From assembly GCF_030028105.1 (NCBI RefSeq), contig NC_092374.1:188388638-188452637 (forward strand): a stretch of 64,000 nt of DNA, in the 5' to 3' direction. The stretch comes from Mobula birostris. Its lineage: Eukaryota. The stretch's first letter is position 1, and the number at the start of each line of letters is the position of its first letter. A program made the position numbers and the translations under genes. Below the pieces are notes generated by a model, which saw nothing but the letters and a program-made list of their open reading frames with translations, did no database searches and was not told the origin of the DNA. Below, one piece after another: positions 32,908 to 63,193 of the stretch.

Positions 32908-32924
32908 TATATGTTAATATTCAC

Positions 32925-32952
32925 AGTCCAGATTTGGCCTCTGAGGTAGTTT
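32925..32952 (-). CDS. Candidate 28-nt cytoplasmic exon (KLPQRPNLD)
   Basis: ctcacag| ... CT|gtgaat; phase 0 to 1 links the 38-nt and 30-nt exons; the splice sites are weaker. Confidence 0.4.
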
Positions 32953-33148
32953 CTGTGAGCGTGTCAGATATATGTGATTGGATTTGACTTAATATATTGG
33001 ATTGTGAGTATCAATGTCTGACTTGTATAAACAGAGTGGGAAGATTTCAGTGTGCACAAATTTGTAGCTGTGTGTCAATAATTTATAGCATATTAAATAA
33101 GCTCTACTGCATAAAATACATTCGCTGGAATTAATACGAACAAAATAC

Positions 33149-33186
33149 CTGTGGTCCTTTTTCATTAGTGTTGCTTTTATTTCTGC
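33149..33186 (-). CDS. 38-nt juxtamembrane cytoplasmic exon (CRNKSNTNEKGPQ)
   Basis: tattttcttcattatag| ... CAG|gtattt; in frame with the TM5 exon. Confidence 0.7.
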
Positions 33187-35465
33187 CTATAATGAAGAAA
33201 ATAATCAATAACTATGGATATTCAATATTTCAATGAATTGTCTCACCAACAGTCACTAAAAGAGTTTCAATCCTCTCTCATTTACTCTTGAGAATTTGAC
33301 CCCTTCTTAGTGACTTAACAGAGAGTGCAGACAAGATCTCCAGTTTACAGACTGGGGAAGGTCCCGGATCACACAGTGGGAAAGGGTTAACAATCAATAG
33401 AAGAGTTGCTTTATGCACAGACTCCCACAGTAACTTCCCTGAGGTGTTTCACATGGAGTATTTTGCTCCCCCATTCTTCTGACTGATGGAATTTCCTGCA
33501 CTCAGAGAGCGCAGAATCAGGACACAGGCTCCCGTCCTGCACTGGGAGCCGGGCCAGGAAATGTGCCTTCTTGTTACTTGCCTTTAAAGATCATGGCTTT
33601 CCCCAAGACAGGGTCTGCCATCACATTCCCATTGCCTGCTCCCAGCTGAATGATTGAAAATTGTGGACTGTGTGCTGAATGTCCAAATACTTAAAATGAA
33701 GGGGCAGACAATCAAACAGCAACTCCTTTCCCAGTTTCCCATATCTGCTCCCCATGGGCAAGGTTCCTTTCACCTTCCTATCCTGGGAATGTGAGTGACA
33801 CCAAGTCCCGACACAAGAGAGACCACAGGTGCAAAGTGCCCTTCGGCTCATTTATCTGGCACTTTCTGGAATCCTCCATCCCTGCCCTCCTCCCAGATGT
33901 TCCCCTGATGGACACGGCACTGGGTTTCACCCACCCCTTCCCTCCAGTGATTGATCCAACTCTACGAGATGATAAACCTCTTGAATTCACTCCCCAACAA
34001 TCTCCAAAAGAGAAATGACAAAAGCCCCTGGACTTCACCTTCACTTACCCCAAGAATTTGACCATCCGGAATGGCACAGGCCGGATATTCACTGGGGTAG
34101 GGCGGGGGGAGGGGAATTGCACAGGCCAGATATTCCCTGGAGGAGGTCAAGGTGGTGGGGGGGGGGGGGGGGGAGGAATGGAAAACTCCGCCTGCACTCA
34201 CCAGTCATCCAGCTGTACCCTTTCCGGACCCAAAGGCAAATCGGGCTGTGCAAGTCTGTGGATACAGTTATAAAACGGGATAAATCAAGCCTCGCCCACA
34301 TTATCCCAGGCAACCTTAACACCACAGTCCTTCCCCCATCACTCTGAAACATCAAAACTAAAACGATATTACTGAGGTACCAATTTGAAATTATTTTAAA
34401 AGGTGCAATAAAAATAGGAATGGCTTAGGGCAGTTGCAGGTCAGGAAGCCTCTGTGGAGACAGAAGTAATTCACGTTTGAGGCCCACGCAGCATCCGGTG
34501 ACAGGCACAGCAAGAAGTTCTGGAGCTCCGCATTCCTGCAGATTTCCAGCAGTCTCCCGTAAGAACGGCAGATTTTTTTCTTGAAAGACGGTGAAATCCT
34601 CCAGTTTTATATTCATCTGTATTTACGTTGGATTCTTTTATTTAATTCACCAGATTTTAATTTCCCCATTGCCCTGTGTCAGGATTCAGGCTTATCGGGC
34701 CGAAAAATTAGTTTTACCACTGTCTCACAGAATAGAACCAAGAGCCCTCTGCACTATAGATAGAAAATACTCAGCAAAGTCCATAAAGAGGATCTAGGCA
34801 ATAAAAATATTTTGAGTGTTTTGACAATACTTCTGATTGATACTGTGTCTTTCTTCACTATGGAATTCTGATGAGGTCAGGCAGGACCTTAATGAAAATC
34901 ATACTCTAATCCCAAAAGGCAAAGTGATCCCCTGATGTCAGGGTGAGATGGGATACAACTCTATTGCAACGCCTGATTGGCAAGAAATGACTAGGGAAGT
35001 GTTAGACTAGTGTGTAATATTGTTATTTTACGCAGATTAACTCTTCCTGTGCTTGCTTAATATGTGTGTAATTGTGGTATTTTACTGAGAAAGGCAGGAG
35101 AATGGGGTTGAGAGAGATAGTAAATCAGCCCTGGAGAGGCAGAGCAGACTCGATGGGCTGAATAGCCTAAACTGCTCCTACGTCTTATAGTCTATTTATG
35201 ACAAAAATACCAATGACTCCATGAGGAGCTTCCAGTAGCAGCAGGGAAGATACAGGCCAGAGCTCCTCCTGAACTACAGCAGCCAGTCAGGGACAGGGGA
35301 GGGGCAACAAGCTGGAGGTTTCCCCATAACCCCAACCTGAAGGGGCAGTGGGACCCTGGGGAAAGTTTTCATTATGACTGAGTTCCTCCAGCATTTTGTG
35401 TGTGCTGCTTTGATTTCCAGCAAAAGGTTTGTGATCTGAAGGGTTCTGATCATTTTGATACTTAC

Positions 35466-35558
35466 AGGAAGAGAATATTAAGGCCATGATAAAGCTGACT
35501 GTACATTCGGCCACTGAGGCGATGAGCACATTCCAAGTGTGGAAGGTACTTCCTTGTT
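35466..35558 (-). CDS. TM5 exon (93 nt): KQGSTFHTWNVLIASVAECTVSFIMALIFSS
   Basis: tattttcag| ... T|gtaagt; phase 1/1; hydrophobic helix. Confidence 0.85.
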
Positions 35559-36059
35559 CTGAAAATATAGAACAGCAAAGACACTGAGTAATCTCGCACA
35601 TGCATATCAATCATATCAACAGCCATTCACAATGGGTCGTCCCAGAATGGCAACATCAAAACCTGAACACAGTCATTTGAGGAAGTGGGGCTGTCAGTTA
35701 GTCATCAATAGCTCTAGCTGCTGACCAACTTCAGAAACTGTGCCGATGCTGTCGAGACTCTGGGGACAGCCAGCCTTACCCTGGCTGGGCCAAGCAGACA
35801 CACTTCCCCCTACCACTGATACCCAGTACCTCCACAATGAAGCTCACTGCTGTCCAGCTGCTGCTCCATCTACTGCAGGGGGGAGGGGAGCAGTGGGCTG
35901 CCGAGCTGGAGAGATGACAGGGAGGTAACAGGTGCCCAAGGTAATTCTCTCCACTCTATCACAGACTGTGTCTTTCCACTCCTTGGTAAACCCCCAAAAG
36001 CTGATCATCTCCCTCTTCTGCCCTCTCCCACCCCCCACAATCGCTACATAATCTGGGAA

Positions 36060-38385
36060 AGACAGACTGCCTTCTGCCACCGCTCAAACGTCAGGCTGCC
36101 GTTTACTGATTACAGCTTAGGGCTCAAAACCATCATCCCCTCAGTACTAATCAAACTTTGAAACCTGGGCCTCTTCCTGCAAAATGGATTCTTGACCTCC
36201 TCATTGGGAGACCTGTCATTTTAGATCCGAAGTAACATCCCTTCCTTGCTGACAGCCAATACTGGCATATCTGAACGATGCATGCTTAGCCCAAAGCTCT
36301 ATTCTCTCTACACCCACAACTGCAACTTATTCTGATCCAGGACAGAGTCCCCCCATCCCATTCCAAACAGTGATACAGCCAGTTAGAATGCTCTCCACAG
36401 TACATCTATAGAAATCTGCGAATGTCTTTGGTGACATACCAAATCCCCTCAAACTGTTCCATTTGACAGATGCAGCATGGATTCAGAAAGGGTAGGTCCT
36501 GTTTGACAAACTTACTGGAGTTCTTTGAGGGCGTAATGAGTGCAGTGGATAGAGGGGAACAGGTGGATGTCGTATACTTGGATTTCCAGAAGGCGTTCGA
36601 TAAGGTGCCGCAGAAGAGACTTATAAATAAGATACGGATGCATGGAGTCAGGGGAAGAGTATTGGCATGGATAGTGGATTGGTTAACCAATAGAAGGCAG
36701 AGAGTTGGTATAAATGGGTGTTTCTCCAGTTACCAGTCAGTGGTGAGTGGAGTGCTGCAGGGGTCAGTACTGGGCCCGCAGCTGTTTACCATTTACATTG
36801 TTGATTTGGGAGAGGAATTTGAGAGTAGGGTAACAAAATTTGCTGATGACAGTAAACTGAGTGGAAAAGCAAATTGTACAGAGGATGTGGAGAGTCTGCA
36901 GAGGGATATAGATTGGTTGAGTGAGTGGGCCAAGGTCTGGCAGATGGAATACAACATTGGTAAATGTGAGATCATCCACTTTGGAAGGAATAATAGAAGA
37001 GCAGGTTATTATTTAAATGGTGAAAGATTGCAGCACGCTGTTGTGCAGAGGGACTTGGGAGTGCTTGTTCGTGAATCGCAAAAAGTTGGCTTGCAGGTAC
37101 AACAGGTTATTAAGAAGGCAAATGGAATGTTGGCCTTCATTGCTAGAGGGATTGAATTCAAGAGCAGGGAGGTTATGCTGCAACTATACAGGGTACTGGT
37201 GAGGCTGCACCTGGAGTACTGTGTGCAGTTCTGGTCTCCATCCTTGAGGAAGGATAAACTGGCTTTGGAGGCAGTGCAGAGGAGGTTCACCAGTTTGATC
37301 CCAGAGATGAAGGGGTTAACCTGAAGAGAGATCAAGTCGCCTGGGACTATACTCTCTGGAATTCAGAAGAATGAGAGGGGATCTTACAGAAACATACAAA
37401 ATTTTGAAAGGGATAGAAAAGATAGAAGTAGGAAAGTTGTTTCCATTGGTAGGTGAGACTAGAACTAGGGGACATTGCCTCAAGATTCAGGGGGAGAAGA
37501 TTTAGGACAGAGATGAGGAGAAACTGTTTTTCCCAGAGAGTGGTGAATCTGTGTAACTATCTGCCCAGGGAAACAGTTGAGGCTTCTTTACTAAATATAT
37601 TTAAGATACAGTTATATAGATTTTTACATAGTAGGGGAATTAAGGGTTATGGGGTAAAGGCAGGTAGATGGAGCTGAGTTTACGGACAGATCAGCCATGA
37701 CCTTATTGAATGGCGAGGCAGGCTCAATGCGCCGGATGGCCTACTCCTGCTCCTGTTTCTTATGTTCTTATGTTAATGAACTGCATTGATATGCTGGACC
37801 CAAGATAGATTCTCAGAGATTTTGGCACCCAGGAACTTAAAATTGCTCACTCTCTCCATTTCTGATCCCTCTATGAGGACTGGTGTGTGTCCTTATGTCT
37901 TTCCTTTTCTGAAGTCTACAATCAATTCTTTGGTGTCATTGACGTTGAGTGCAAGGTTGTTGATGGATCAACCAGCTGATCTATCTCACTCCTGTACGCC
38001 CTCTTGTAACCATTTGAAATTCTGCCAACAATAGTTGTGCCATTAGCAAATCTATAGATGGCATTTGAGCTGTGTCTAACCACACAGTCATGGGTTTAGA
38101 GAGTGAGTAGAGTAGAGTAGTGGGCTAAGCACACAACCTTGAGGTGCGCCAGTGTTGATTTGGAGATGCTATTTCCGATCTGCACAGGCCATGGTCTTCC
38201 AGTGAGAAAGTCAAGGATCCAGTTGCAGAGGGAGGTAAAGGGGTCCAGGTTTTGGAGCTTTTTGAGAAGAACTGCAGGAATGACTGTGTTAAATGCTGAG
38301 CTGTAGTCTACTAGCATCAGCCTGGCATAAATATTAGTATTGTCCAGGTGATCCAAGGCATCATGAGAAGCCTATGAGATGTTTC
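36060..38385. mobile_element. Rex1/Babar fragments (partly inverted) with a CR1 inserted at ~36455-37773
   Basis: [17 protein letters not shown] on minus; CR1 QHGFRKGRSCLTNLLEF...KFADD on plus with a (TTCTTATG)n tail. Confidence 0.85.
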
Positions 38386-39914
38386 TGTTAGGATAGGAGT
38401 CCCATCTCAAGTGGAGGCTCACTTCATTGCTACCAGCCCTGCCAAAACGGATGCCTGCATCCTTTCCAACTAAAAAATGGAACCTCAGATTCTTATATCA
38501 ACACCTCAGCCACATACAAATTCCCTTGACACCTGTTTATATCCAATTTAGTGTTCAGTTTGGGCGGTCATTCAGAGATTATTATGAATAATGTTTAATC
38601 ATTTTGTTCAGCAATTAAACTCATTCCCAAAATTTGGAACTTCCTGCTCTATAGAACGACAACTCCCTAGAACTCCACTTGTTAATTTGTTGGCAAACAC
38701 CCCCTCATTTTATACACTCAGTGGCCATTTTCATTAGGTACCACCTGATGTTTGTGGCGGTAGCCCATGCAATTCAAGGTTTGACATGTTGTGCATTCAG
38801 AGATGCTCTTGGGTGTATTTAAAGCGGATGTTGTTAAGTCCTTAATTAGTCAAGGCGTCAAAGATTATGGGGAGAAGGCAGAAGAATGGGGTTGAGAGGG
38901 ATAATAAATCAGCCATGATGGAATGGTGGAGCAGACTTGAAGGGCCAAATGGCCTAATTTGCTCCTATGCCTTTTGGTAAAGGTCTCCTCACCAGCAGCT
39001 GGTGGACTTGTGGAATTTGTTGCCACAGGCAGCTGTGAAGGTCAGGCCGCTGTGTGTATTATAAGGCAGAGATTGATAGGTTCTTGATTGGACACAGCAT
39101 CAAACGTTACAGGGAGAAGGTCAGGGAGTGGGGCTGAGGAAGGGAAAAAAGGACCAGCCGTGATTGAATGGCGAAGCAGACTTGATGGGCCAAATGGCCT
39201 AATTCTGCTCCTATGTCTTATAGTCTTATGGACATAACAAAGTGGTTAAGCAACAGTTGGACTCACAGGGCACATCCAAAATCTAATGTCACCTTGTCCA
39301 TTGACAAGTAACATAGTGGGATCTGTTCATGAAATAATGACCGTAGTTCTGATTTCAATTGAACAAAACCTCCCAATACCATCTTCTACACTCCGCAGAC
39401 TCATTAATCAGGCCTCTCCCGAACAGTGAACCCGTCCCTTGGACGAAGCACTGAGATGAACAGAGGAGGAATGCACTCTGTGTGGGGTATTTCAATGTCC
39501 AAGTGTGTCACGGGTTGTGACACAACTAACTGCTGTGCACTCAAGCAATGGCAGATAGAAGTTGTTCAAGTATAGTTGTCATTCAACCATACACAAAACA
39601 TCGTTCTTCTGGGGCCAAGGTGAACAAACACACTACACAGAGTCACACACAGTACATAAGAGTTATGATCCAGCACATACAGTCACAAAATACTATAAGC
39701 ATAAGTCGCTGAGTGGTCTGAAAGTGTGGGATGTTGTCCTGAAGCGTTTCTGCAAGAACAAGCACGCAGCAGTTACTCATCTCACGATGAACCAATCTAA
39801 AAGAGAAACCTTCCTGACCTTACACACACAACTCTAATTGCTGTGACTCACAGACACACTCTTGTCCTGCACTGGCATTTTCCATCTTTTATTGCTGCTG
39901 TTTCACATATTTAT

Positions 39915-40447
39915 ATAGAAACATAGAAAATAGGTGCAGGAGTAGGCCATTCGGCCCTTCGAGCCTGTACCGCCATTCAGTATGATCATGGCTGATCATC
40001 CAACTCAGAACCCTGTACCTGCCTTCTCTCCATACCCCCTGATCCCCCTAGCCACAAGGGCCATATCTAACTCTCTCTTAAATATAGCCAATGAACTGGC
40101 CTCAACTGTTTCCTGTGGCAGAGAATTCCAGATTCACCATTCTCTGTGTGAAGAAGTTTTTCCTAATCTCAGTCCTAAAAGGCTTCCCCTTTATCCTCAA
40201 ACTGTGACCCCTTGTTCTGGACGTCCCCAACATCGGGAACAATCTTCCTGCATCTAGCCTGTCCAATCCCTTTAGGATTTTATACGTTTCAATCAGATCC
40301 CCCCTCAATCTTCTAAATTCCAACGAGTACAAGCCTAGTTCATCCAGCCTTTCTTCATGTGAAAGTCCTGCCATCCCAGGAATCAATCTGGTGAACCTTC
40401 TTTGTACTCCCTCTACGGCAAGGATGTCTTTCCTCAGATTAGGGGAC
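39915..40447 (-). mobile_element. CR1 3' fragment
   Basis: LRKDILAVEGVQRRFTRLIPGM...RGHSLRIKG. Confidence 0.85.
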
Positions 40448-40635
40448 TGTGTTACTGTGTTCACTGTGTTATTATAACAGTGCCAGTAACATTATACTAT
40501 GTTACATAAACTGCACCTCACACTTTATATCAACCTGTCAGCCTTCAGGCCAGGCCACGCAGGGACTTATGCTAATAGTCTTTGAGTGACTGCATCTGCT
40601 GGATCATGAACAGTATGGAGAAATAGACAACTCAC

Positions 40636-40719
40636 TTTCCTGATGGATGTCTTTGATGAAGAAAGCAATTGAGGTGCCAACCACGATGACGTGCAGTGCA
40701 AGCTGAATAACTGAAATAA
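40636..40719 (-). CDS. TM4 exon (84 nt): VISVIQLALHVIVVGTSIAFFIKDIHQE
   Basis: ttctctgtctctgacag| ... GAAA|gtgagt; 85-nt intron to TM3; an alternative in-frame acceptor lies 9 nt downstream. Confidence 0.82.
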
Positions 40720-40804
40720 CTGTCAGAGACAGAGAACATGATGATAAGAGAGTTGGATATCACTACGACTGGAAATTTTATAAAACTGATGAGCTGTTTC
40801 TCAC

Positions 40805-40927
40805 CGATACTGGTGCTGAATCTGCAAATTCGCCGGCATTTAGGTACTTGAATGATAAATGGTACAGTCAAAGTAAACAATAGGAGAACTGCAATGCATG
40901 CTGTAGCCACATTTAGTAAACAAGAAT
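40805..40927 (-). CDS. TM3 exon (123 nt): DSCLLNVATACIAVLLLFTLTVPFIIQVPKCRRICRFSTSI
   Basis: tgtttgctctag| ... ATCG|gtgaga; phase 1/1. Confidence 0.85.
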
Positions 40928-42986
40928 CTAGAGCAAACACCAAACAGTAAGGGTTAGCAATTTATGCAGAACTTGAGAAATTAAGCCAACAAGATAGCAT
41001 AATCCCATTTCCCAACAGTAGTTAGATATTAGTTCCACTGATGTAGGTGAGACTGGAAAGGCCCACTCTCTCCTCTCCCTACCTCATCTTCGTATGACTC
41101 CCCCATCCCAACCCCCCAGCTTCACCTGGATTGACCTATCACCTGCCAGCTCTTACTTCACCCCTTTCCCCTCATCTTTTTATAATGGCCATCTCCACTC
41201 TTGCTTCCAATCCTGATCAAGGGTCTCGATCCAAAACTTGAAGTGGCCATTTCCCTCAGAGAGACGGTGACCAATTCACAGATTTCTTCTAGCTCCATCG
41301 TGAGCAGCACCAGAAAGGCTTCATTGCTGTCCATAAGCAAAAGAGATTTTGCAGTCGCTGAAAATCTTGAGAAACAGACACAAAATGCTGGAGAAACTCA
41401 GCAAGCCAGGCAGCATCCAAGGAGGGGAATAAACAGTCAACGTTTCAGGTCGAGACTCTTCATCCAGATCTAACAAATCCTAATGAAGAGTCCTGGACCG
41501 AAAAGTCAACTGTTTTATTCCCCTCCCCTCCACAGATGCTGCCGAACTTCCAGAATTTTGAGTGTGTTGTGTGTGCTCATTTGTGGCTCACCTGTTTACC
41601 CCCAATAGGGTGATGGCGAGCACCCTAATGTAACCTCCGCTGTTCCCATGGGTAGGCAATCTCATGAGTTCCTTGGTGTGATCATGCCTCATTTCTCACC
41701 TTAGATGCACGCCCTCTGGTATTATACATTACAACCCGAAGAAAAAGATACCAGCTACGTACCCGTGCCTCTCATAACCTTATAAACTCTCGGTCTCCCC
41801 TCAGCCTCAACCTCAACCTCTCCAGAGAAAACACATTTTTGTCCACACTCCCCTCATGGCATGTGCCCTGTATTTGAGGCAGCATCCTGGTGAACCTCTT
41901 CTGCACCCTCCCCAAAGCTTCTGCATTCTTTTTTTGCAATGAAACAACTGGGATTAAATGCAGTAGTCCACACGTAACCTAGCTACAGTTTAGTAAAGTC
42001 GCAACACGACTTCCCAATTCTTGAAATCAGTTCCACAACTGATAAAGATAATAAGCATGTTATATACCTTCTTTAGCATCCTATCAACTTGAGGCCACTT
42101 TCACCTACAGACTTGGACCACAGGTTGTCTCTGTACATCAATACATTTAAAGGTCCTGCCATTAACAGTGCACTGACTTTTTACATGTCGTCTGCCAAAG
42201 TGCAAAGCTTCACGTTTGGCCAGATTAAGCGCCACCTGTCATTTCTGCAAGTGATCTCTGTTCTTTTCTAGTATTCTACACTAACCGTAACATCGCCAAT
42301 CCTTGTATCATTTGCAAACCTGCTAACCCCTTCCCCCTGCAAACAATCTATGTCCTTTGCCATTTTTCAAAGCTATCCACAAAATCACCAAGCTCTGTAT
42401 CATCTGCAAACCTGCTAACCCCCTCCCCTTGCAAATAACTCTACACTCCTACCCCGAGTCAATTGTCTGCCCACGTCAATAGCAACAAACTGTCAACTCA
42501 ACGAGTTTCAACATAAGGATTTTATTAAATGCCATCTGGGAGTTCAGATCCCCAATGGGCCTATCAGTATACCTATCGATATTAAGCTCAACCACACTAA
42601 GTGTGGCCAGTGACTCATTAAAACAGAATAGAACTTGATTGCCATTGCTAGACAACAAGATTGTGAGGCTACTGCAGTCTGTGTAAAACAGATATTTACA
42701 ATACATGTGGTACAGCTTAATAAAACTAACAATTTCGATATTTACAAGCAATATGTGACCTTGATTCTACTGGCAAGCCGGGGTGTAGCATTGTTCACCG
42801 TTATTGAAGCCGAAACCTCCAGCAGTTTCTCTTCCCTCGGCCGTGGGACCGAGGACTGCAGGTGCTGGTGGTCCTAAGGAAGCACCGTACAGAAATGCAC
42901 TGAACAAGGCACTTGTCTGTTCCAAACCCCCCAGAGGTTTGGAAGTTGGTCACTTTTATGGAAGTGAGTAACATCTGTGCACAAAC

Positions 42987-43088
42987 CTTTAAAATGAACC
43001 GAGCGACTGAACGCAGCGAGGATGAAAAGAAGCTGCAGGATGTTACATATATACAGGACATGCTTCCACTGTTCGTACTTTGGTAATT
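42987..43088 (-). CDS. TM2 exon (102 nt): ELPKYEQWKHVLYICNILQLLFILAAFSRSVHFK
   Basis: tgtccttttctccatag| ... AAAG|gtttgt; phase 1/1. Confidence 0.82.
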
Positions 43089-45598
43089 CTATGGAGAAAA
43101 GGACACAAGTATCAAAGCTGCAAAAGTCACACAAGTGGGTCAACATATGCCTGAAGTGATAAAGTACATACTGAACCTAATAAGGAACAGAAAGAATAAA
43201 GCTTGGTGCAGAAGGCCAGGATCTTTGAAATTGGTCACTCAGGTAGATAAGATAGTCAATGAGACAGAGGGACTTCTTGCTTTGAAAAAATATTCTTGCT
43301 CAAATCACTTTTAAACCTTTTACCCTTCACTCAAAATTTATCTCCTTTAATTTTACACACCTGCTATGGGGAAATATTTCTATATTAGCCTTGTAAGGTG
43401 AGATAATGGTTTTGCTTACACAGACAGTGGTGGGTGCCTTGGGGCAAATGGAGCTCAGCAGCTGTGGTTGGCAGCTCATTTGGGGGAAGGACGACTCAGA
43501 TCTCCAGCCTCCGCTGCCTTGCGGCTACTCCCACTCATAGGGAAGACTTGCGTTGAGTTCGATGCTGACTGGCAACTTCTGTGGCGCTGCTGGTGCCAAA
43601 CTGTAATGGCCTCTGCAGTTCCTTTAGATTCATCAGCAGCGTGGAGAAGGGGAGCCTGTCATACTGCCCTGGTTTGCATATCACGTAGAAAGCCGGGATG
43701 CAACTTCCCTGGTCAACCCCAACCAACAGAGGACCTATGGTGGGAGCCTAGAACCTGCAGCCAGGGGTGGTGGTTGGGGCTGATATATAAGGGACACCAG
43801 AGACTCTTAGATAGGCGAATGTGTGATAGAAAAACGGAGAGTTATGGGATGTGTCAGAGTAACAGGGTTAGGTTGATCATGGGGTAAGGGTGGAACAACA
43901 TTGCAGGCTGAAGGGCCTATGCTGGGTTGTGCAGCACTGTCCTCTGTTCTATGTAGCCTGAGCATGGAAAACAACGCTGGGGAGCAAGTAGTACATCTTT
44001 ATAATCACTGATTAGGCCTCAGCTACAGTAACAAGTGCAGTTCCAGTCATCACACCCTAAAGGGATCAAGTATTACATTGGTCTGGGTACAATTTTAGTT
44101 GTCATTCGTGAATACCCATGAATACAGCCAAACAAAACAGCGTTACATCGTGGCTAAGGTGCAAGACACAGTACCAACAGTCACACACAGCACAAAGCAC
44201 ATAGAAGGCAGCAAGCAAATATAAGATACAAATAAAATACAGTCACACAAAAATATGTATATTCCAAGACCCTGAGTCGATGAATATTGCAGAAATCTGC
44301 AGTCGAACACAATACGCCTTGTCTACCTCCGACTGAACACTTGGGCAGGGTTGGGGGGGGGGGGGAGAGGGGAAGCACGGGTAGCGCTGACTCCTGCTTG
44401 GACGCCGCGCCACACTGCCTCCAGTGGAGCGCACCAACTGACGCCTTTCACCTGTGCGGCTGCAGACAGCGACACTGCAGCTTAAGGCCTAGTCCTCGCT
44501 ACGACTGATGCCACGCAGCTCCTCTACCATTCACCAATAAGTTAGTGAAACAGACTTGCAGCATTCCACATTAACAAGGCATGGAGTGTTTCATTCTCCT
44601 TGGAGTGGAGGAGGACAAGGAGGAAGCCAGATTCAAGATGTGCAAATGAGGAGGAGTGTAAATAGTGGGAGACATTAGACAGCTTAAGTTTAGGGCAAGG
44701 GGTAAGAGGGTGAGAAGCACCATCCAGATGGTGCTTGGCATCTGAAAGATGTTGCATGTCGGAGTTCACAGGAACTGTAATATAGAGTAGTTGTTAAGTC
44801 ACGTTTTGGAACCATTAGGCCTGTTTCTGTAATGTGATGCTCTTTGGTCCATCCATTTTGAAGCATACTGGATTGATGGCAAGAATGTGGTAAGTGTGGA
44901 TGCTGATGACTGATTGGTACCAAGCAGGACTCACTAGCTTTCTGAGTTTACCCCTCACTTATTCCTTTACTCTGCGGTTCCCGTCTATAGGGTGGGAGGG
45001 CGGAGCGTTGGAGAATGATGAACTGTATTGGATCGATCGCGAGAATGTGATACAGCACCGATCTTCCAGCCCTTCAAACCGCCTCGCCCAGCAACCCACA
45101 ATTTAACCCTAGCTTAATCACGGGATAATTTACAATGACCAATTAACCTACTAACCAGTATGCCTGTGGAATCTGGGAGGAAACCAGAGCACCCAGAGGA
45201 AACCCACGTGTTCACAGGGAGAACACACAAACTTCTTACAGGCAACAGTGGGAACTGAACCCAGGTCGCCTGTACTGTAAAGCATTGTGCTAACCACTAC
45301 GCGATCGTGCCGCCCCATTAACATTCTCTTAAAGGTTGCAATTGGACTTGCATCTACCACTTCTGCTGGCAGCTTGTTCACCCTCGTAGCACCCTCAGAG
45401 CAAAGAAGCTCCCCTTCAGCTTCCCCTTGGATATTTTATCTTTCACTCTAAACCTGTGACCTCCGAGTCACAACCAATCTAAGTGGAAAAAGCCTGTAAG
45501 CATTCGCCTCTCTGCCTGTTGTTACTAATATTAATAAAGATTTGCAAGCAATGCCTGCACATTTATGTTAAAGTGTAAACTGGACAAAAATGGAATAC

Positions 45599-45715
45599 CT
45601 CTGTTTGATTTACACTTCCAGATGTTCAGAAGAAAAACTGCAATAAGATAAACTGAAGAAAACACCAGGGCTGAGATCGACAGAACAATCATCGGAATGT
45701 CATCAGCGGAAGGGT
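45599..45715 (-). CDS. TM1 exon (117 nt): DPSADDIPMIVLSISALVFSSVYLIAVFLLNIWKCKSNR
   Basis: tgtgtttaattgcag| ... AGAG|gtattc; phase 1/1. Confidence 0.87.
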
Positions 45716-54450: not shown

Positions 54451-54454
54451 AAAT

Positions 54455-56010
54455 GGTCGATGAACCGAGTGAGTATTTTGTAGCAGTCTACACTGTGGAA
54501 GACAATAGTAGTATGCCGGAAGTTCAAGAGTGTCAAGGGGCAAAAGTGAGTGTAGTTGCTATTACAAGGGAGATGGTGTTTGGGAAACAGAAAAGTCTAA
54601 AGCCACCTGGACCTGCCAGACAATACCCCAGGGTTCAAAAAGAGGTAGCTGGTGATTATGGAGGCACTATTAATGACCTTTCAAGAAACAATAGATTCTG
54701 GCATGGATTTGGAGGACTAGAAATTACAAATGTCGCTCTACTCTTCAAGAAGGGAGGAAGACAGAAGAAAGGAAATTATAGGCCAGTTCGCCTGACCTGA
54801 GTGGCTGGGAAAGTGTTGGATTCGATTGTCGGGGATGTAATTTCGGGGAACTTGGAGGCACTTGACAAAATAGGCTAAAGTCACCATAGCTTCCTTAAGT
54901 GAAAAACTGGCATGACAAATCTGTTGGAATTCTTTGAATAATAAGTAGGATAGACGAAGAGAATTGGTGGATGTTGTGTACTTGGATTTTCAGAAGGCCT
55001 TTGACAAGATGTCACACGTAAAGCTGCTAAACAAGATAAGCGCCCAGGGTATCACAGGAAAGGTTCTAGCATTGGCTGAGTGGCAGGAGGCTACGTGTGG
55101 GAATAAAGGGAGCCTTTTTTTGGATTGGCTGCTGGTGACTAGTGGTATTCCACAGGGGTCTGTGTTGGGACCGATTCTTCTACATTGTATGTCAACAATT
55201 CGGATGATGGAATTGATCATTTTTGCAACCAAGTTTGCTGATGATATGAAGATAGATGGAGGGGTAGGTAGTGTTGAGGAAGCAGAGAGGCTGCAGGAGG
55301 ATTTAGACAGATTAGAAGAATGGGCAAAGAGTGGCAGATTGAATACTGTGTCGGGATGTGTATGGGCACACACTTTGGTAGAAGGAATAAAAGTGTAGAC
55401 TACTTTCTAAATGGGAAGAAGATTCAAAAATCTGAGGTGCAATGTGATTTGGGAATCCTCATGCAGGATTCCCAAAAGGTTAATATGCAGGTTGAATCAG
55501 TTGTGAGGAAGGCAAATGAAATGTTAGCATTCATTTCAAGAGGACTACAATATAAACACAAAGATGTAATGCTGAGGCCTGTATAAGGCAAGGGTGAGGC
55601 CTCACAGAGTGGTGTGAGCCGTTTTGAGCACCTTTTCCAAGAAAGAACGTGTTGATACCGGACTGGGATTGGAGTAGGTTCACGAGAATGATTCCAGGAG
55701 GGAAAGAGTAGCGATTGAAGGCTCAGGGCCTGTACTCGCTGGAATTGAGAAGGACTGGGGGTGGTGGGGGAATCTCATTGAATACTGAAAGGCCTAGATA
55801 GTGCAGATGTGAAGAGGCTGCTTACTTTGGTGGGGGAACCTATGACCAGAAGACACAGCCTCAAGATAGAAGGACATCCATTTAGAACAGAGAGAGGGGG
55901 AAGCTCTTTCCCCAGAGGGAGGTGAATCTGTCGAATTTCTTGCCACTGGCAGCTGTGCAGGCCAGGTCACTGGATGCATTTAAGGCGTAGGTTGATAGGT
56001 TCTTGATTAG
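54455..56010 (+). mobile_element. Degenerate CR1 fragment; duplicated at 56870-57890
   Basis: VDVVYLDFQKAFDKM, KFADD; the two copies are near-identical. Confidence 0.88.
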
Positions 56011-56376
56011 TTGGAGCACGTAGGTTATGGGAGAAGCAGAAGAATGGAGTCGAGAGGGAAATGGGTCAGTCATGGTGAAATGGGAGAGCAGACTCAATGG
56101 GCTGAATGGCCTATTTCTGTTCCTATGTCTTATGGAGATCCAGAGTAACACTCACATACACTGGTGCTGGAGGAACTCAGCAGGTCAGGCTGCATTCATG
56201 GAGAGGAATGAACAGGCCACGTTTCAACTTGAGACCCTTCATCAGTATCATTCCTCTCCATAGATGCTGTCTGATGTGCAGAATTCCTGCAGCAATTTGT
56301 GTCTGTTCATGAGAACTTGTCCAAGCTGAACAGCATCCAATCCTAATATAAATGCTCAGTGACACAAGCTACTCAC

Positions 56377-56682
56377 CAAAGATTCGCAAATCTATTTTTC
56401 TCAGCTTTCGACTATTAACGCTGATAGTATAATTTCCCTGGTCACTTGTCTTTAAATTGCTTAATAATAAATCTCCAGTGGACAGATTAAAATTCAAACG
56501 ATCTTTAAAATATTTGTTTGGTTTCACTTCTGGGTGGTTTGGTCCAACATCCAAAATGGTGAACTCGGTTTCATTGTTGCTAGTGAACTTCCACACAACT
56601 TCATGACCATGGAGATTGGCACTGTTTCCAGACTCCAACGAAACATTTGAACCAAGGGCACCCTCAACTTGCTTCATCTCTG
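56377..56682 (-). CDS. Ig V-set exon B (306 nt, cysteine-free, CD2/SLAM/CEACAM N-domain type)
   Basis: (T)n-ccttccttaatgcccag| ... TTTG|gtgagt; phase 1/1; G-x-N-V-x-L, VVWKF, DRL, GDLLLSNL and DQGNY V-set motifs. Confidence 0.93.
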
Positions 56683-57896
56683 CTGGGCATTAAGGAAGGA
56701 AAAAAAAAATCAGTTATGTTGCATCCTTGAAAAAGGTGAAATGTGGGCAGAGTTCAAGGCAAGGTGATATACATAACTAAACAGAAGGCAACTAAAAAAA
56801 ACAGTTTTGCTGGGAGGGGGGGAAAACGATGAAATATGTAGCTAAGCTAGCCTAAAATACCAGTATATTTTCAGATATATAAAAGGAGGCAATAGTAGGA
56901 TTGGACCATTGGAAAACGATGCTGGAGAGATAGTAATGCGGGACAAGAGAAAGGTGGACGAACCGAGTGAGTATTTTCTATCAGTCTTCACTGGGGAAGA
57001 CACCAGTATGCCAGAAGTTCAAGAGTATCAAGGGGCAGAAGTGAGTGCAGTTGCTATTACAAGGGAGATGGTGTTTGGGAAACAGAAATGTCTAAAGTCA
57101 CCTGGTCCTGCCAGAAAATACCCCAGGGTTCAAAAAGAGGTAGCTGAAGAGATTATGGAGGCATTAGTAATGAACTTTCAAGAAATCGATTCTGGCATGG
57201 ATTTGGAGGAAGGAAAATTGAAAAGTCACTCCACTCTTCAAACAGGGAGGGAGGCAGAAGAAAGGAAATTATAGGCCAGTTACCCTAACCTGAGTGGCTG
57301 GGAAAGTGTTGGATTCGATTGTTGGGGATGTAGTTTCAGGGAATTTGAAGGCACACGACAAAATAGGCTAAAGTCAGCATAGCCTTCTTAAGGGAAAATC
57401 TGGCATGACAAATATGTTGGAATTCTTTGAATAATAATTAGGATAGATGAAGAGAATTGGTGGATGTTGTGTACTTGAATTTTCAGAAGGCCTTTGACAA
57501 GATGTCACACGTAAAGCTGCTAAACAAGTTAAGAGCCCAGGGTATCACAGGAAAGGTTCTAGCATTTGCTGAGTGGTAGGAGGCTACGTGTGGGAATAAA
57601 GGGAGCCTTTTTTTGGATTGGATGCTGGTGACTAGTGGTATTCCACAGGGGTCTGTGTTGGGACCGATTCTTCTACATTGTATGTCAACGATTTGGATGA
57701 TGAAATTGATCATTTTATGACCAAGTTTGTGGATGATATGAAGATGGATGGAGGGGTAGGTAGTGTTGAGGAAGCAGAGAGGCTGCAGGAGGCCTTAGAT
57801 TAGAAGAATGGGCAAAGAGGTGGCAGATTGAATACTGTGTCGGGAAGTGTTTGGGCACACACTTTGGAAGAAGGTATAAAAGTGCAGGCTAATACT

Positions 57897-59677
57897 GGGG
57901 TTCCGGTGACGTCATTGCTCAGAATGGCAGCTTAAGTCAACAGCGTCTCCGGAAAAACGCATATTTTGGCCAGTTAATCCATCAAATATAAGATCTTTCG
58001 AAAATATCTGAATTGATAAGGGAAGGCAAGAATGGGGAGAAGGAATGGAGATAAAAAAAGCACCACTGCGGAGCCTTTGGAAGAGAAAGGTACAGCGTGT
58101 GGCTCTCCTACACGTGCATGTGGTGGCGATGCTGACGCTGGGCCTAGTGCAGTCGAAGCGGCAAATTTGAAAAGGATTTTGGAAGAGATAAGGGAAGTTC
58201 AAAAAGATATAAAACAACAACTCAATGATATCCAGTCAGAGCTCGCCAATGTCAATGAGAAAATAACGGTGGCAGAGACTCGAATTGAGAAGATGGAAGA
58301 TCGCATGCAAAATGTGGAACAGATACTAAAAGTAAGACGATAAAAATATTAAATCAACAGGAAAGTAAATTGCTTGACCAGGAGGGAAGATCGCGATGGA
58401 AAAATATCAGGATTTATAATGTTCCCGAAGGAGCGGAGGAATTGTTGATGACAGACTTGTAGACTAGCTGCTGCGGGAAGCGCTGGAGATTCCTCAGACT
58501 ACGGAGATTGAAATTGAAAGGGCGCACCATTCACCTGTCCAGCGGCCTCTCAGAGACAGAGAAGGTAAACCGCGCTCCATAGTACTTAGATTCCTTCGAT
58601 TCAAGAGCAAGGTGGAGATTCTACGAAGGGCCTGGGGTAAGAAGAGGGTATTTTGGAACGGGAAGTTAACATACTTCGATCATGATTACCCCCCGGCGGT
58701 CCTACAGAAACGGAAAGAATATTCCGAAGCAAAACGAATATTAAAGCAAGAAAAGATTAAATTCCAAATCCCATACCCTGCTAAACTGAGGGTATTTTAC
58801 CAAGAAGGGACGCGACTGTACCAGACGGTGGAGGAGGCAACTACAGACATGAACAACAGAGGACTGTCCATTAGCGTGGTCAAACCAAGGGAAAGTCTGG
58901 CTGAGCAGTTATCCCGAACTGCTTGGGAAATAGTAAGAGAACCTGGAAAGCAGGGGACGGAAACAGGACAAGAAAAGGATTTTAGGAGGAGACTGTCAGT
59001 TCTCCGAGGGCAGCCCTCACCTCCTCCAGAAGAGCCATAAGGTTTGGCTAATTTTAAAAGTGCTGATAAACTAAACGGAAGCAAAAATAGACGGTGAGAT
59101 ACCCATCTCGAGAAATACGTGTTATAATGTGGATTTTATATTACTCAATTTTTAAAATTTATTTATTCATTCCTTTTTCCCCACCTAAATGAGAATATAT
59201 ACATGGGAGGAATACACAGGGAAATCATTTCTGTGTAATGGACATCGTTTTTTTTTTAAACTTACTTTTATAGGTACTGCAGCAGGGGCCTCAACCCACG
59301 GGTAGGAGGGGCTATCCCCCACGGCTAGACTTTTCTTCTAGCCCAACCCAGGGTCATCTAGAGACCCCAGCCTTGGAACCACACCTTCGTTACCCTTTTT
59401 TTAAAATTCACTTTTCTTGGTTCTTATTTGTTCAGGGAGTAGATCGATTAAGTTATATTCTGCAAACTTCAATGATATACTAACAGATAAATGAGAGTAA
59501 GACCATATATTTTGGTATATACCTCAAGAATGGTTGAAAAGAGATATAAATATTTGATGAATGTACTGCTGGTGGCTGGTAAAAAGACCCTTACCAGGAA
59601 ATAGTTATCTCAGGAGAGCCCAACTTTAAATGTATGGATGGAAATTACAATGGACATTTACAAAATGGAGAAGATAA
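57897..59677 (+). mobile_element. L1-clade LINE with ORF1 (disrupted) joined to only the last ~150 bp of ORF2
   Basis: 5' GGGGTTCCGGTGACGTCA; coiled coil plus FDHDYP...YPAKLRV (L1 ORF1 C-terminal domain); LLVAGKKTLTRK...WMEITMDIYKMEK at 59560-59677; no RT. Confidence 0.82.
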
Positions 59678-59689
59678 GTTCTTGATTAG

Positions 59690-62325
59690 ACCCATGGAAA
59701 ACCTACAGCACAATACAGGCCCTTCGGCCCACAGAGTTGTGCTGAACATGCCCTTACCTTAGAAATTACTAGCCCTCTATTTTACTAAGCTCCATGTACC
59801 TATCTAAAAGTCTCTTAAAAGACCCTATCATATCCACCTCCACCACCATTGCTGGCAGCCCATTCCATGCACTCACCACTCTCTGAGTAAAAAACTTACC
59901 CCTGACATCTCCTCTGTACTTACTCCCCAGTACCTTAAACCTATGTCCTCTTGTGGCAACCATTTCAGCCATGGGAAAAAGCCTCTGACTATGCACACGA
60001 TCAATGCCTCTCATCATCTTATACACCTCTATCAGGTCATCTCTCATCCTCCATCACTCCAAGGAGAAAAAGTTGAGTTCACTCAACCTATTCTCATAAG
60101 GAATTCTCCCCAATCCAGGGAACGTCCTTGTAAATCTCTTCTGCATCCTTTCTATGGTTTCCACATCCTTCCTGTAGTGAGGCGACCGAAACTGAGCACA
60201 ATACTCCAAGTGGGGTCTGACCAGGGTCCTATATAGCTGCAACATTACCTCTCAGCTCCTAAATTCAATTCCACGATTGATGAAGGCCAATACACCGTAC
60301 GCCTTCTTAACCACAGAGTCAACCTGCACAGCTGCTTTGAGGGTCCTATGGACTCGGACCCCAAGATCCCTCTGATCCTCCAAACCGCCAAGAGTCTTAC
60401 CATTCTATATTCTGCCATCATATTTGACCTACCAAAATGAACCACTTCACATTTATCTGGGTTGAACTCCATCTGCCACTTCTCAGCCAGTTTTGCATCC
60501 TATCAATGTCCCGCTGTAACCTCTGACAGCCCTCCACACTATCTACAACATGTCCAACCTTTGTGTCATCAGCAAACTTACTATCCCATCCCTCCACTTC
60601 CTCATCCAGGTCACTTACAAAGAGTAAGGGTCCCAGAACAGATCCCTGAGGCACTCCACTGGTGATCAACCTCCATGCAGAATATGACCCGTCTACAACC
60701 ACTCTTTGCCTTCTGTTCTGGATCCACAAAGCAATGTCCCCTTGGATCCCATGCCTCCTTACTTTCTCAATAAGCCTGGTTTGGGCTACCTTAACAGATG
60801 CCTTGCTGAAATCCATATACACTACATCTACTGCTCTTCCTCCATCAATGTGTTCAGTCACATCCTCAAAAAATTCAATCAGGCTCGCAAGGCATGACCT
60901 GCCCTTGACAAAACCATGCTGACTACTCCTAATCATATTATACCTCTCCAAATGTTCATAAATCCTGCCTCTCTGGATCTTCTCCATCAACTTACCAACC
61001 ACTGAGGTAAGACTCACTGGTCTATAATTTCCTTGGCTATCTCTACTCCTTTTCTTGAATAAAGGAACAACATCCGCAACCCTCCAATCCTCCGTAACCT
61101 TTCCCGTCCCCATTGATGATGCAAAGATCATCGCCAGAGGCTCAGCAATCTCCTCCCTCGCACCCCACAGTAGCCTGGGGTACATCTCATCCGGTCCCGG
61201 CGACTTATCCAACTTGATACTTTCTAAAAGCTCCATCACATCCTCTTTCTTAATATTTACATGCTTGAGCTTTTCAGTCTGCTACAAGTCATCACTATAA
61301 TCACCAAGATCCTTTTCCATAGTGAATACTGAAGTATTCATTAAGTACCTCTGCTTTTTCCTCCGGTTCCATACACATTCCCACTGTCACACTTGATAGG
61401 TCCTATTCTTTCGCGTCTTATCCTCTTGCTCTTCACATACTTGTAGAATGCCTTGGGATTTTCTTTAATCCTGCCCGCCAAGGCCTTCTCATGGCCCCTT
61501 CTGGCTCTCCTAATTTCTTTCTTAAGCTCATTCCTATTAGCCTTATAATCTTCTAGATCTCTATCATTACCTAGCTCTCTGAACCTTTTGTAAGCTTTTC
61601 TTTTCTTCTTGACTAGATTTATTACAGCCTTTGTACACAACGGTTCCTGTACCCTACCATAACTTCCCTGTCTCATTGGAACGTACCTATGCAGAACTCC
61701 ACACAAATATCCCCTGAATATTGGCCACATTTCTTCTGTACTTTTCCCTGAGAACATCTGTTTCCAATTTAAGCCTCCAATTTCCTGCCTGATAGCCTCA
61801 TAATTCCCCTTACTCCAATTAAACACTTTTCTAACTTGTCTGTTCCTATCTCCCTCCAATGCCACTGTAAAGGGGATAGAAGTATGATCACTATCTCCAA
61901 AATGCTCTCCCACTGAGAGACCTGACACCTGACCAGGTTCATTTCCCAATACCAAATCAAGTACAGCCTCTCCTCTTGTAGGCTTATCTACATATTGCGT
62001 CAAGAAACCTTCCTGAACACACCTAACAAACTCCACCCCATCTAAACCCTTTGCTCTAGGGAGATGCCAATCGATATTTGGGAAATGAAAATCTCCCATC
62101 ACAACAACTCTGTTATTATTACACCTTTCCAGGATCTGTTTCCCTACCTGCTCCTCGATATCCCTGTTAATATTGGGTGGTCTATAAAAAACACCCAGTA
62201 AAGCTATTGACCCTTTCTTGTTCCTAACCTCCACCCACAGAGACTCCGTAGACAATCCCTCCATGGCGTCCACCTTTTCTGCAGCCATAACACTGTCTAA
62301 TCAACAGTGCCACACCCCCACCTCT
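59690..62325 (-). mobile_element. CR1 LINE (endonuclease + RT + 3' end, frameshifted)
   Basis: GVFYRPP, GDFHFP, SDHT; KSPGPDEMYP, KFADD; LEYCAQF. Confidence 0.93.
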
Positions 62326-62688
62326 TTCCCATGTAGGTTATGGGAGAAGCAGGAGAGTGGAGTCGAGAGGAAAATGGGTCAGTCATGGTGAAATGGGAGA
62401 GCAGAGTCAATGGCTGAATGGCCTATTTCTGCTCCTATATCTTATGGAAATCCAGAGTAACACTCACATACACTGGTGCTGGAGGAACTCAGCAGGTCAG
62501 GCTGCATTCATGGAGAGGAATGAACAGTCGACGTTTCAAGCTGAGACCCTTCATCAGTATCATTCCTCTCCATAGATGCTGTCTGATGTGCAGAATTCCT
62601 GCAACAATTTGTGTCTGTTCATGAGAACTTGTCCAAGCTGAACAGCATCCAACCGTACTATAAATGCTCAGTGACACAAGCTACTCAC

Positions 62689-62994
62689 CAAAGATTCGCA
62701 ATTCTCTTTTTCTCGGCTCCTGACCATCAATGCTGATAGTATAATTTCCCTGGTCACTTGTCTTTAAATTGCTTAATAATAAATCTCCAGTGGACAGATT
62801 AAAATTTAAACGATCTTCAAAATATTTGTTTGGTTTCACTTCTGGGTGGTTTGGTCCAACATCCAAAATGGTGAACTCGGTTCCATTGTTGCTAGTGAAC
62901 TCCCACACAACTTCACGACCATGGAGATCAGCACTGTTTCCAGACTCCAACAAAACATTCGAACCAAGGGCACCCTCAACTTGCATCGTTTCAG
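62689..62994 (-). CDS. Ig V-set exon A (306 nt, cysteine-free), paralog of exon B
   Basis: Same acceptor and donor context as exon B; about 22 nt differences by hand count; frame open. Confidence 0.93.
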
Positions 62995-63193
62995 CTGGGC
63001 ATTAAGGAAGGAAAAAAAAAATCAATTAAGTTGCATCCTTGAAAAAGGTGAAATGTGGGCAGGGGTCAAGGCAAGGTGATAAATGAAATAGACATAAGAA
63101 CTCCTCTCAATAAGGGGCATTTGCACTAGACACAGGTCTAAAATTAAAACGGAAAATATTGGACGTGTTCAACAGGTCAAGCAGCATCAGAGG

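What the first reader, a model, noticed from the sequence alone, without database searches (positions are those of the whole stretch)
54462..63080. Intragenic tandem duplication of the IgV exon with divergence concentrated in the F-G hairpin
Seen in sequence: the block CR1 fragment + IgV exon (54462-56768) recurs as 56951-57890 plus 62335-63080, the second copy being interrupted by L1 and CR1 insertions. Both exons keep their frame and splice sites. By hand count they differ at about 22 of 306 nt, giving 16 amino-acid changes, and 8 of these fall in one 10-codon stretch near the C-terminal end (IDGQEPRKRE versus VNSRKLRKID). Several are charge swaps (E/K three times, D/N twice). Established: the GFC face and FG loop are the ligand-binding surface in CD47-SIRPalpha and CD2-family pairs. 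Inference: either a two-domain ectodomain or mutually exclusive or skippable exons that switch ligand specificity.
Basis: partly seen in the sequence, partly recalled or inferred. Interest (0 to 1): 0.7.

Follow-up and report, generated by a model that had tools for sequence, protein, structure and literature searches.

The report
Duplicated V exon in manta receptor
A manta-ray gene for a surface protein on a five-helix membrane anchor carries two tandem copies of its antibody-like V exon; gene models join them into a two-domain head, and the copies differ most in one charged loop.

Summary
Two intact 306-nt, phase 1-1 IgV exons lie on the minus strand: B at 62689-62994 and A at 56377-56682. 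They sit inside a tandemly duplicated block of at least 2.3 kb. They differ at 22 nt and 16 residues. Eight of those residues fall in 10 codons of the F-G hairpin (permutation P about 1e-4).

The gene is already in RefSeq as Mobula birostris "uncharacterized protein" isoforms X1-X4 (XP_072115211-214). I rebuilt all four exactly from the window with GT-AG introns. X1-X3 splice B to A, giving V-V on a five-helix membrane module. X4 skips A. No A-only model exists. So this is a two-domain ectodomain with a skippable second V, not mutually exclusive exons.

M. hypostoma has orthologues of both copies plus a third V. Six of the eight hairpin differences predate that species split, three on each copy. 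Copy A reversed its loop tip from acidic DGQE, the family consensus, to basic NSRK, and lost about seven negative charges overall.

V exons have multiplied separately in stingrays, sawfish and a shark.

This is a well-supported, ordinary kind of event in an unstudied family. The scan has noted similar V-exon duplications elsewhere in this genome.

The parts
62689..62994 (-). IgV exon B. It is the 5', membrane-distal V domain (V1) and is constitutive in all four RefSeq isoforms.
   Evidence: Open frame, phase 1-1. Pfam V-set 28.6 bits against a cut-off of 26. 100% match to residues 40-141 of XP_072115211-214.
56377..56682 (-). IgV exon A. It is the 3', membrane-proximal V domain (V2) and a cassette exon. 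RefSeq uses the distal AG of a CAGCAG tandem acceptor, so the spliced exon is 56377-56679 (303 nt).
   Evidence: Open frame. Pfam V-set 30.5 bits. Present in X1-X3 and absent from X4.
62702..62731 (-). F-G hairpin codons of exon B (IDGQEPRKRE). It keeps the family-consensus acidic tip DGQE.
   Evidence: Strand F is residues 122-128, the loop 129-133, and G starts at 134 in the model.
56390..56419 (-). F-G hairpin codons of exon A (VNSRKLRKID). The tip is derived and charge-reversed (NSRK).
   Evidence: 9 of the 22 nt differences lie here. Polarised with outgroups. Strand F is 223-229, the turn 230-231, and G 232-242.
54451..55402 (+). Duplicated block, copy 1, CR1-like reverse-transcriptase fragment. 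It continues as CR1 to about 56135.
   Evidence: 90.7% identical to 56950-57891. Matches the full-length CR1-like element of the window. Pfam RVT_1.
56017..56769 (+). Duplicated block, copy 1: CR1 3' end, intron, exon A and 87 nt of upstream intron.
   Evidence: 94.3% identical to 62330-63081.
56950..57891 (+). Duplicated block, copy 2, CR1-like fragment. The CR1 extends about 56 nt further 5', to about 56894.
57892..62329 (.). Post-duplication insertion in copy 2, replacing 614 bp of CR1. It holds a minus-strand non-LTR element (endonuclease plus RT, about 59.8-62.3 kb) and a plus-strand coiled-coil ORF1-like fragment (58.0-59.0 kb).
   Evidence: Absent from copy 1. Pfam Exo_endo_phos_2 and RVT_1.
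62330..63081 (+). Duplicated block, copy 2: CR1 3' end, intron, exon B and 87 nt of upstream intron.
29589..45715 (-). The rest of the gene: eight exons for the five-helix membrane module and tail. They are 45715-45599, 43088-42987, 40927-40805, 40719-40636, 35558-35466, 34255-34202 (cassette, absent in X2), 33186-33149, and 29657-29589 (with stop). The leader exon lies beyond the window's end.
   Evidence: Exact spliced reconstruction of X1-X4. Five long helices in the model.

Best explanation
Exons B and A are two tandem V-domain exons of one Mobula birostris gene (RefSeq XP_072115211-214, 'uncharacterized protein'). The gene encodes leader, V, V and a five-helix membrane module.

They arose by a segmental tandem duplication of at least 2.3 kb in the Mobula lineage. 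The duplicated unit was a CR1 fragment plus intron plus exon. The event predates the M. birostris / M. hypostoma split. Retroelements were later inserted into the upstream copy.

The exons are spliced in series, B then A. This gives a two-V ectodomain whose first G strand runs straight into the second domain. A is a symmetric cassette that can be skipped to give a one-V form. B is always present.

Soon after the duplication the F-G hairpin changed in both copies, about three replacements each. After that it was largely retained in both species. B keeps the family's acidic DGQE tip. A has a basic N(S/G)RK tip and lost five acidic residues overall, taking net charge from -7 to 0.

What is shown: the duplication, intact frames and splice sites, exact agreement with the gene models, the clustering, the polarity and timing of the changes, and the hairpin location.

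What is inferred: that transcripts really include A, that the hairpin change was driven by selection, and that it alters binding.
For: - Duplication and counts.
- All four RefSeq isoforms rebuilt exactly from the window with GT-AG introns. Sources and names.
- M. hypostoma LOC134346677 has V1 with the IDGQE-type hairpin and V2 and V3 with the VNG(R/L)K type.
- The V1 orthologues pair in the tree with 95/93 support, and V domains otherwise group by lineage.
- Outgroups and distant relatives carry VDGQEL.
- Clustering P about 1e-4.
- There are 8 non-synonymous hairpin changes against 1.2-2.0 expected at the neutral rate (P = 3e-5 to 1e-3).
- Hairpin dN/dS is 2.4, against 0.51 for the rest of the exon.
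- Net charges.
- Strand assignment and five membrane helices.
- V-V ectodomains have a structural precedent. JAML is the best fold match.
Against: - The isoforms are computational RefSeq models.
- The protein collection holds no independent transcript-derived fragment of these exons.
- Whole-exon dN/dS is 0.83, not above 1. The hairpin dN/dS rests on 8 non-synonymous and 1 synonymous change.
- The neutral baseline is uneven. JC distance is 0.046 beside the exon and 0.083 in the CR1 block (Fisher P = 0.02). Conversion or constraint may therefore have acted near the exon.
- The structure model is only moderate (mean pLDDT 68.8, V domains about 70-87).
Confidence: 0.78

Rival explanations
1. The hairpin cluster is a mutational artefact rather than selection. 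It could be a short gene-conversion tract copied from another family member, or a single complex multi-nucleotide event, afterwards merely tolerated.
For: - Nine differences lie in 30 nt, one codon with two changes.
- The copies show mosaic patterns that point to exchange. M. birostris A shares S13 and N21 with M. hypostoma V2 but H25 and K58 with V3. M. hypostoma V1 and V2 share I62.
- Divergence is lower next to the exon than further away.
- The family is large, so donors exist.
Against: - The eight differences split about evenly between the two lineages when polarised with outgroups. One tract cannot explain them all.
- None of the 150 representative relatives outside Mobula carries an N[GS][RLK]K tip.
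- The changes in A fit a directional loss of acidic residues that also occurs outside the patch: D21N, E30K, E58K.
Confidence: 0.25
2. Exon A encodes a stalk or spacer domain under relaxed constraint. Only the distal V1 binds ligand. The proximal copy replaces the C2 domain that other family members carry, and its former binding loop is free to drift.
For: - Relatives in sawfish and sharks have V-V-C2 or V-C2 before the membrane module, while Mobula and stingray genes have no C2.
- B keeps the consensus DGQE tip and A lost it.
- A can be skipped (X4).
Against: - Since the species split the A-type hairpin has changed little. It shows 1 of 10 residues between M. birostris A and M. hypostoma V2, against 6 of 91 elsewhere. 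That is a burst followed by stasis, not steady drift.
- B's hairpin also changed.
- dN/dS outside the hairpin is 0.51, so the domain is constrained.
Confidence: 0.2
3. Mutually exclusive exons: each transcript carries either B or A, switching specificity.
For: Homologous tandem exons of equal length and phase are the usual raw material for mutually exclusive splicing. The divergence sits in a likely binding loop.
Against: - Three of four RefSeq isoforms contain both, and none contains A alone.
- Including both keeps the frame (306 + 303 nt).
- Orthologues in M. hypostoma, Hemitrygon, Hypanus and Pristis are modelled with two or three V domains in series.
Confidence: 0.04
4. Exon A is an unused pseudo-exon, or the duplication is an assembly artefact.
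For: No read evidence was available here.
Against: - A is intact after 5-8% neutral divergence, with dN/dS 0.51 outside the hairpin.
- An orthologous copy is intact in an independent M. hypostoma assembly.
- The two copies have different retroelement content, which rules out a haplotype duplicate.
Confidence: 0.05

Closest known systems
B7-H3 (CD276) 2Ig/4Ig isoforms made by tandem Ig-exon duplication (PMC3172298)
   Same: An intragenic tandem duplication of Ig exons in an immune-type surface protein. It arose in some lineages and not others, gives longer and shorter ectodomain isoforms, and the copies have diverged.
   Different: B7-H3 duplicated a V-C exon pair on a single-pass protein. Here one V exon alone was duplicated, on a five-helix membrane module, and no function is known.
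CD47 (IgV + five transmembrane helices)
   Same: The overall build: N-terminal V-type domain(s), five membrane helices, and a short alternatively spliced cytoplasmic tail.
   Different: No detectable sequence relationship. There is no Pfam CD47 membrane-region hit, and a profile of the membrane module does not find CD47 among solved structures. CD47 has one V domain. The V domains here have no cysteine.
CD2/SLAM-family V domains
   Same: A V-set domain without the canonical B-F disulfide (no Cys in either exon) and the D-x-G-x-Y motif. There are weak Pfam hits to the 2B4 and SLAM models. The GFC face and F-G region are the binding surface in that family (established knowledge).
   Different: The Pfam 2B4 and SLAM scores are below the curated cut-offs. 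There is no C2 domain, no single-pass anchor and no ITSM tail.
JAML and other V-V ectodomains (CD226, CD96)
   Same: Two V-type domains in series. JAML is the top Foldseek match in PDB and Swiss-Prot models.
   Different: TM-scores are low (0.2-0.4) and identity is about 20%. JAML is single-pass. The match reflects domain type and order, not orthology.
Shark-and-ray Ig + five-pass membrane family noted elsewhere in this scan (s1-145080, s1-145079)
   Same: The same genome, chromosome region and build. This gene is a member.
   Different: Those members are V-C2-5TM. This one is V-V-5TM with no C2 exon.

Membership tests
Immunoglobulin V-set domain | Match to Pfam PF07686 above the gathering score | tested here: met
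   30.5 bits (A) and 28.6 bits (B) against a cut-off of 26. The predicted strands are A, B, C, C', D, E, F, G.
Tandem exon duplication | Homology extends from the exon into both flanking introns, in the same order and orientation | tested here: met
   Colinear blocks 54451-55402 / 56017-56769 and 56950-57891 / 62330-63081.
Cassette (skippable) exon | Length a multiple of three with equal phases, plus an isoform that lacks it | tested here: met
   303 or 306 nt, phase 1-1. RefSeq X4 joins B directly to 45715. This rests on gene models only. Reads were not available.
Mutually exclusive exon pair | The two exons are never included together, or joint inclusion breaks the frame | tested here: not met
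   X1-X3 include both in frame. There is no A-only model.
CD47 family | IgV followed by five transmembrane helices | tested here: met
   Helices at 248-279, 286-314, 318-342, 353-382 and 389-422 in the model. A hydropathy count gives 5-6.
CD47 family | Sequence homology of the membrane module to CD47 | tested here: not met
   No Pfam CD47 hit at E <= 0.01. A 22-sequence profile of the module finds no CD47 chain at E <= 10.
CD2/SLAM family | V domain lacking the canonical disulfide, paired with a C2 domain on a single-pass anchor | tested here: not met
   There is no Cys in either V exon, which fits. But there is no C2 exon between 56.4 and 45.7 kb, and the anchor is five-pass.
CD2/SLAM family | Match to Pfam 2B4 or SLAM V-domain models above the cut-off | tested here: inconclusive
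   Receptor_2B4 scores 13.4 bits against 21. SLAM scores 22.5 against 25 in the Hemitrygon orthologue.
Positively selected binding loop | Non-synonymous rate above the neutral rate on the relevant branches, by a codon model | tested here: inconclusive
   The pairwise Nei-Gojobori hairpin ratio is 2.4. There are 8 changes against 1.2-2.0 expected. No branch-site test was possible because M. hypostoma DNA could not be fetched.

The most novel reading that the evidence does not exclude
The duplication created an electrostatically complementary pair inside one protein: an acidic, DGQE-tipped distal V and a basic, NSRK-tipped proximal V. The two would bind each other in cis or between cells, as CD2 and CD58 do after their gene duplication. 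Skipping exon A would switch that self-recognition on or off.
Probability: 0.08. Interest if true: 0.6.

Novelty: new member of a known kind. Interest (0 to 1): 0.33.

Why it matters
This is a clean, dated example of a surface receptor gaining a domain by exon duplication. The new copy's probable binding loop was then quickly retuned: a charge reversal was fixed before two manta species split and has been kept since.

The gene family is undescribed and restricted to sharks and rays. It has the same build as CD47, and its V-exon number varies from one to at least three in the closest orthologues. That makes it a workable system for asking whether extra V domains add binding sites or only height.

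It does not change any general principle. The gene and its isoforms are already in RefSeq.

Tried and rejected
- **Read evidence.** No read-level test of splicing was made.
- **Exon-only protein search.** The exon alone found nothing in the word-indexed protein search because of its length window. The exhaustive search found the family.
- **M. hypostoma DNA.** Isoform X2 was not on record. For X1 the sample's file was too large. All cross-species work is therefore at protein level.
- **A third V exon or a C2 remnant in the window.** A relaxed tblastn finds only the two exons. No C2 match appears.
- **CD47 homology of the membrane module.** None found.
- **'L1' label for part of the insertion.** Not confirmed by Pfam.
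- **Strand-specific G-to-A mutation process.** I considered this because 9 of about 12 derived changes in A are G to A on the coding strand. The flanking introns show no such bias. The pattern is more simply the signature of acidic-to-neutral or basic replacements. I did not pursue it.
- **Literature.** Searches found no description of the family.
- **Assembly artefact and mutual exclusion.** Both rejected, as explained under the rival explanations.
Full report
**1. What is in the sequence**

The region holds a tandem duplication. BLASTN of the window against itself pairs 54451-55402 with 56950-57891 at 90.7% identity. It pairs 56017-56769 with 62330-63081 at 94.3%.

The first block of each copy is a plus-strand CR1-like reverse-transcriptase fragment. 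The second block is the CR1 3' end, a short intron stretch, an exon, and 87 nt beyond it.

Between the two blocks, copy 1 has 614 bp of continuous CR1. Copy 2 has 4438 bp instead (57892-62329). That insert contains a minus-strand endonuclease plus reverse-transcriptase element and a plus-strand coiled-coil ORF. Pfam does not confirm the latter as L1 ORF1.

The exons lie on the minus strand:
- B is 62689-62994.
- A is 56377-56682.
- Each is 306 nt, open, and phase 1-1.
- Each has a long polypyrimidine tract plus AG acceptor and an identical G|GTGAGT donor.

Both pass the Pfam V-set gathering score. Neither contains a cysteine.

**2.

The counts are exact. There are 22 of 306 nucleotide differences and 16 amino-acid differences. 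Eight of them fall in the ten codons IDGQEPRKRE (B) against VNSRKLRKID (A). E/K occurs three times and D/N twice.

The clustering is not chance:
- Random placement gives 9 differences in 30 nt with P = 0.002.
- Random placement gives 8 differences in 10 codons with P = 0.0002.
- Weighting sites by how variable each column is in 36 V domains of the family leaves P near 1e-4.

**3. What gene this is**

An exhaustive protein search with exon A found a family. Cluster look-ups named the members.

The window's gene is Mobula birostris 'uncharacterized protein', with four isoforms:
- X1: XP_072115211, 468 aa
- X2: XP_072115212, 450 aa
- X3: XP_072115213, 399 aa
- X4: XP_072115214, 367 aa

I rebuilt the part of each protein from residue 40 onward, base for base, from the window using only GT-AG introns. 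The exon chain is B, A (from 56679, the distal AG of a CAGCAG tandem acceptor), 45715-45599, 43088-42987, 40927-40805, 40719-40636, 35558-35466, 34255-34202, 33186-33149 and 29657-29589.

The isoforms differ as follows:
- X2 lacks the 54-nt exon.
- X3 lacks the 40.9/40.7 kb pair.
- X4 lacks exon A.

The leader exon is outside the window.

The predicted structure has mean pLDDT 68.8, with the V domains mostly 70-87. It shows two V-type sandwiches followed by five long helices. This is a V-V-five-pass protein.

No C2-type exon and no third V exon are present in the window.

**4. How the two exons are used**

In the models, B is constitutive and A is a cassette. Three isoforms carry B then A in series, one carries B alone, and none carries A alone.

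Joint inclusion keeps the frame. In the model, the G strand of the first domain continues directly into the first strand of the second.

Independent annotations give the same picture:
- M. hypostoma LOC134346677 has forms with three V domains (X1, X2) and two (X3).
- Hypanus sabinus LOC132394532 has two-V and one-V forms.
- Hemitrygon akajei has three V domains.
- Pristis pectinata and Heptranchias perlo have V-V-C2.

I therefore read the locus as a two-domain ectodomain with an optional second domain, not a mutually exclusive pair.

The caveat is that these are gene models. The protein collection also contains no independent transcript-derived fragment.

**5. When and how the copies diverged**

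In a tree of V domains, the M. birostris and M. hypostoma V1 domains pair with 95/93 support. The A-type domains of both species group near each other. The V domains of stingrays, sawfish and the shark each cluster within their own lineage.

In Mobula the homology between copies runs through 2.3 kb of intron and CR1, at only 4.6-8.3% divergence. This duplication is therefore specific to the Mobula lineage. It is not an ancient pair kept similar by exon-limited conversion.

I polarised the differences with outgroups:
- The V1 stem acquired M1T, K2M, V87I, a change at L92, and D96E.
- The V2/V3 stem acquired E30K, D88N, Q90R and E91K.

Six of the eight hairpin differences therefore predate the species split, three on each copy. 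Since the split the hairpins changed little: 2 of 9 differences between V1 orthologues and 1 of 7 between A and M. hypostoma V2.

The tip motif DGQE is the family majority, even in relatives at about 38% identity. B keeps it. A reversed it to NSRK (NGRK or NGLK in M. hypostoma).

A also lost acidic residues at D21N, E30K and E58K. Net charge is -7 for B and 0 for A. In M. hypostoma it is -5 for V1 and 0 for both V2 and V3.

E30K sits next to the near-invariant Trp on strand C. By the alternation of strand residues, it lies on the same sheet as F and G. This placement is an inference.

**6. Rates**

| Region | dN/dS (Nei-Gojobori) | Counts |
|---|---|---|
| Whole exon | 0.83 | 16 non-synonymous, 5 synonymous |
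| Hairpin | 2.4 | 8 non-synonymous, 1 synonymous |
| Rest of exon | 0.51 | 8 non-synonymous, 4 synonymous |

Neutral estimates differ along the block. JC distance is 0.083 in the distal CR1 block and 0.046 in the 446 nt beside the exon (Fisher P = 0.02).

Against either estimate, eight non-synonymous hairpin changes exceed expectation. Expected numbers are 1.2-2.0, giving P between 3e-5 and 1e-3 before correcting for about ten windows.

This fits an early adaptive shift, but the numbers are small. The uneven baseline hints at conversion or constraint near the exon. A previous follow-up in this genome (s1-145217) found that intron stretches next to V exons can be conserved elements, which is a further reason for caution.

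**7. Signs of exchange between copies**

M. birostris exon A shares S13 and N21 with M. hypostoma V2, but H25 and K58 with V3. M. hypostoma V3 keeps outgroup-like states (V7, E10) that V1 and V2 have both lost. M. hypostoma V1 and V2 share I62.

One simple reading is that the Mobula ancestor had three V exons. M. birostris exon A would then be a V2/V3 hybrid left by unequal crossing-over between codons 21 and 25. This is an inference from protein data only and needs M. hypostoma DNA. I put it at about one in three.

**8. Comparison with known systems**

- **B7-H3.** Tandem Ig-exon duplication giving longer and shorter isoforms is known for B7-H3, where it arose in some mammalian lineages (PMC3172298).
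- **V-V ectodomains.** JAML is the best fold match, though with low TM-scores.
- **CD47.** The V plus five-helix build recalls CD47. No sequence relationship is detectable by Pfam or by a membrane-module profile against solved structures.
- **CD2/SLAM.** The V domains resemble CD2/SLAM V domains in lacking the disulfide. The specific Pfam models score below their cut-offs, and the rest of the architecture differs.
- **Literature.** I found no paper on the family.

**9. Verdict**

The gene and its isoforms are already in RefSeq. What is new is modest: the dating, polarity and charge logic of the hairpin divergence, and the evidence for repeated gain and probable loss of V exons. The scan has reported similar V-exon duplications in other manta receptor genes (s1-145217, s1-145264).

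Noticed in passing
window 746-1710: A 34-bp minisatellite of about 28.6 copies at 92% match. Short related arrays lie near 3869-4027 and 5734-5798.
   Followed up: partly
window 7598-8234 and 9323-10008: A large inverted repeat with arms of about 640 bp that are 89-93% complementary, about 1.1 kb apart. It coincides with a sharp flip of GC skew from +0.25/+0.36 at 4-8 kb to -0.34 at 8-10 kb. A weaker outer pair lies at 4131-4784 and 8476-9129.
   Followed up: no
window 46268-49398, minus strand: A CR1-like retrotransposon in the intron between exon A and the first membrane exon. It has an uninterrupted 875-aa endonuclease/RT ORF and an upstream 144-aa ORF, so it may be a young or active copy.
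   Followed up: no
window 50204-51172 and 52419-53342: Fragments of Tc1/mariner-type transposase ORFs in the same intron.
   Followed up: no
window 34202-34255 and 40636-40927, minus strand: Further alternative splicing in the RefSeq models. A 54-nt cassette changes the cytoplasmic tail (X1 against X2). Joint skipping of two exons would remove 69 residues of the membrane module (X3), roughly two helices, which would alter the topology. M. hypostoma X2 shows the same skip.
   Followed up: partly
proteins P0003, P0004, P0006, P0008: Relatives of this V domain include very long proteins with 12-17 V-type repeats and no predicted membrane helices after the last V domain (one in P0008). Their source organisms were not looked up.
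   Followed up: no
Hypanus sabinus XP_059826796/7 (P0152, P0001): The two V domains of the stingray orthologue are identical in amino-acid sequence. This could be a very recent duplication, conversion, or an assembly or annotation effect.
   Followed up: no
window 56377-56682 against 62689-62994: Nine of about twelve derived changes in exon A are G to A on the coding strand. The flanking introns show no such bias. This is probably a by-product of acidic-to-basic replacements.
   Followed up: partly
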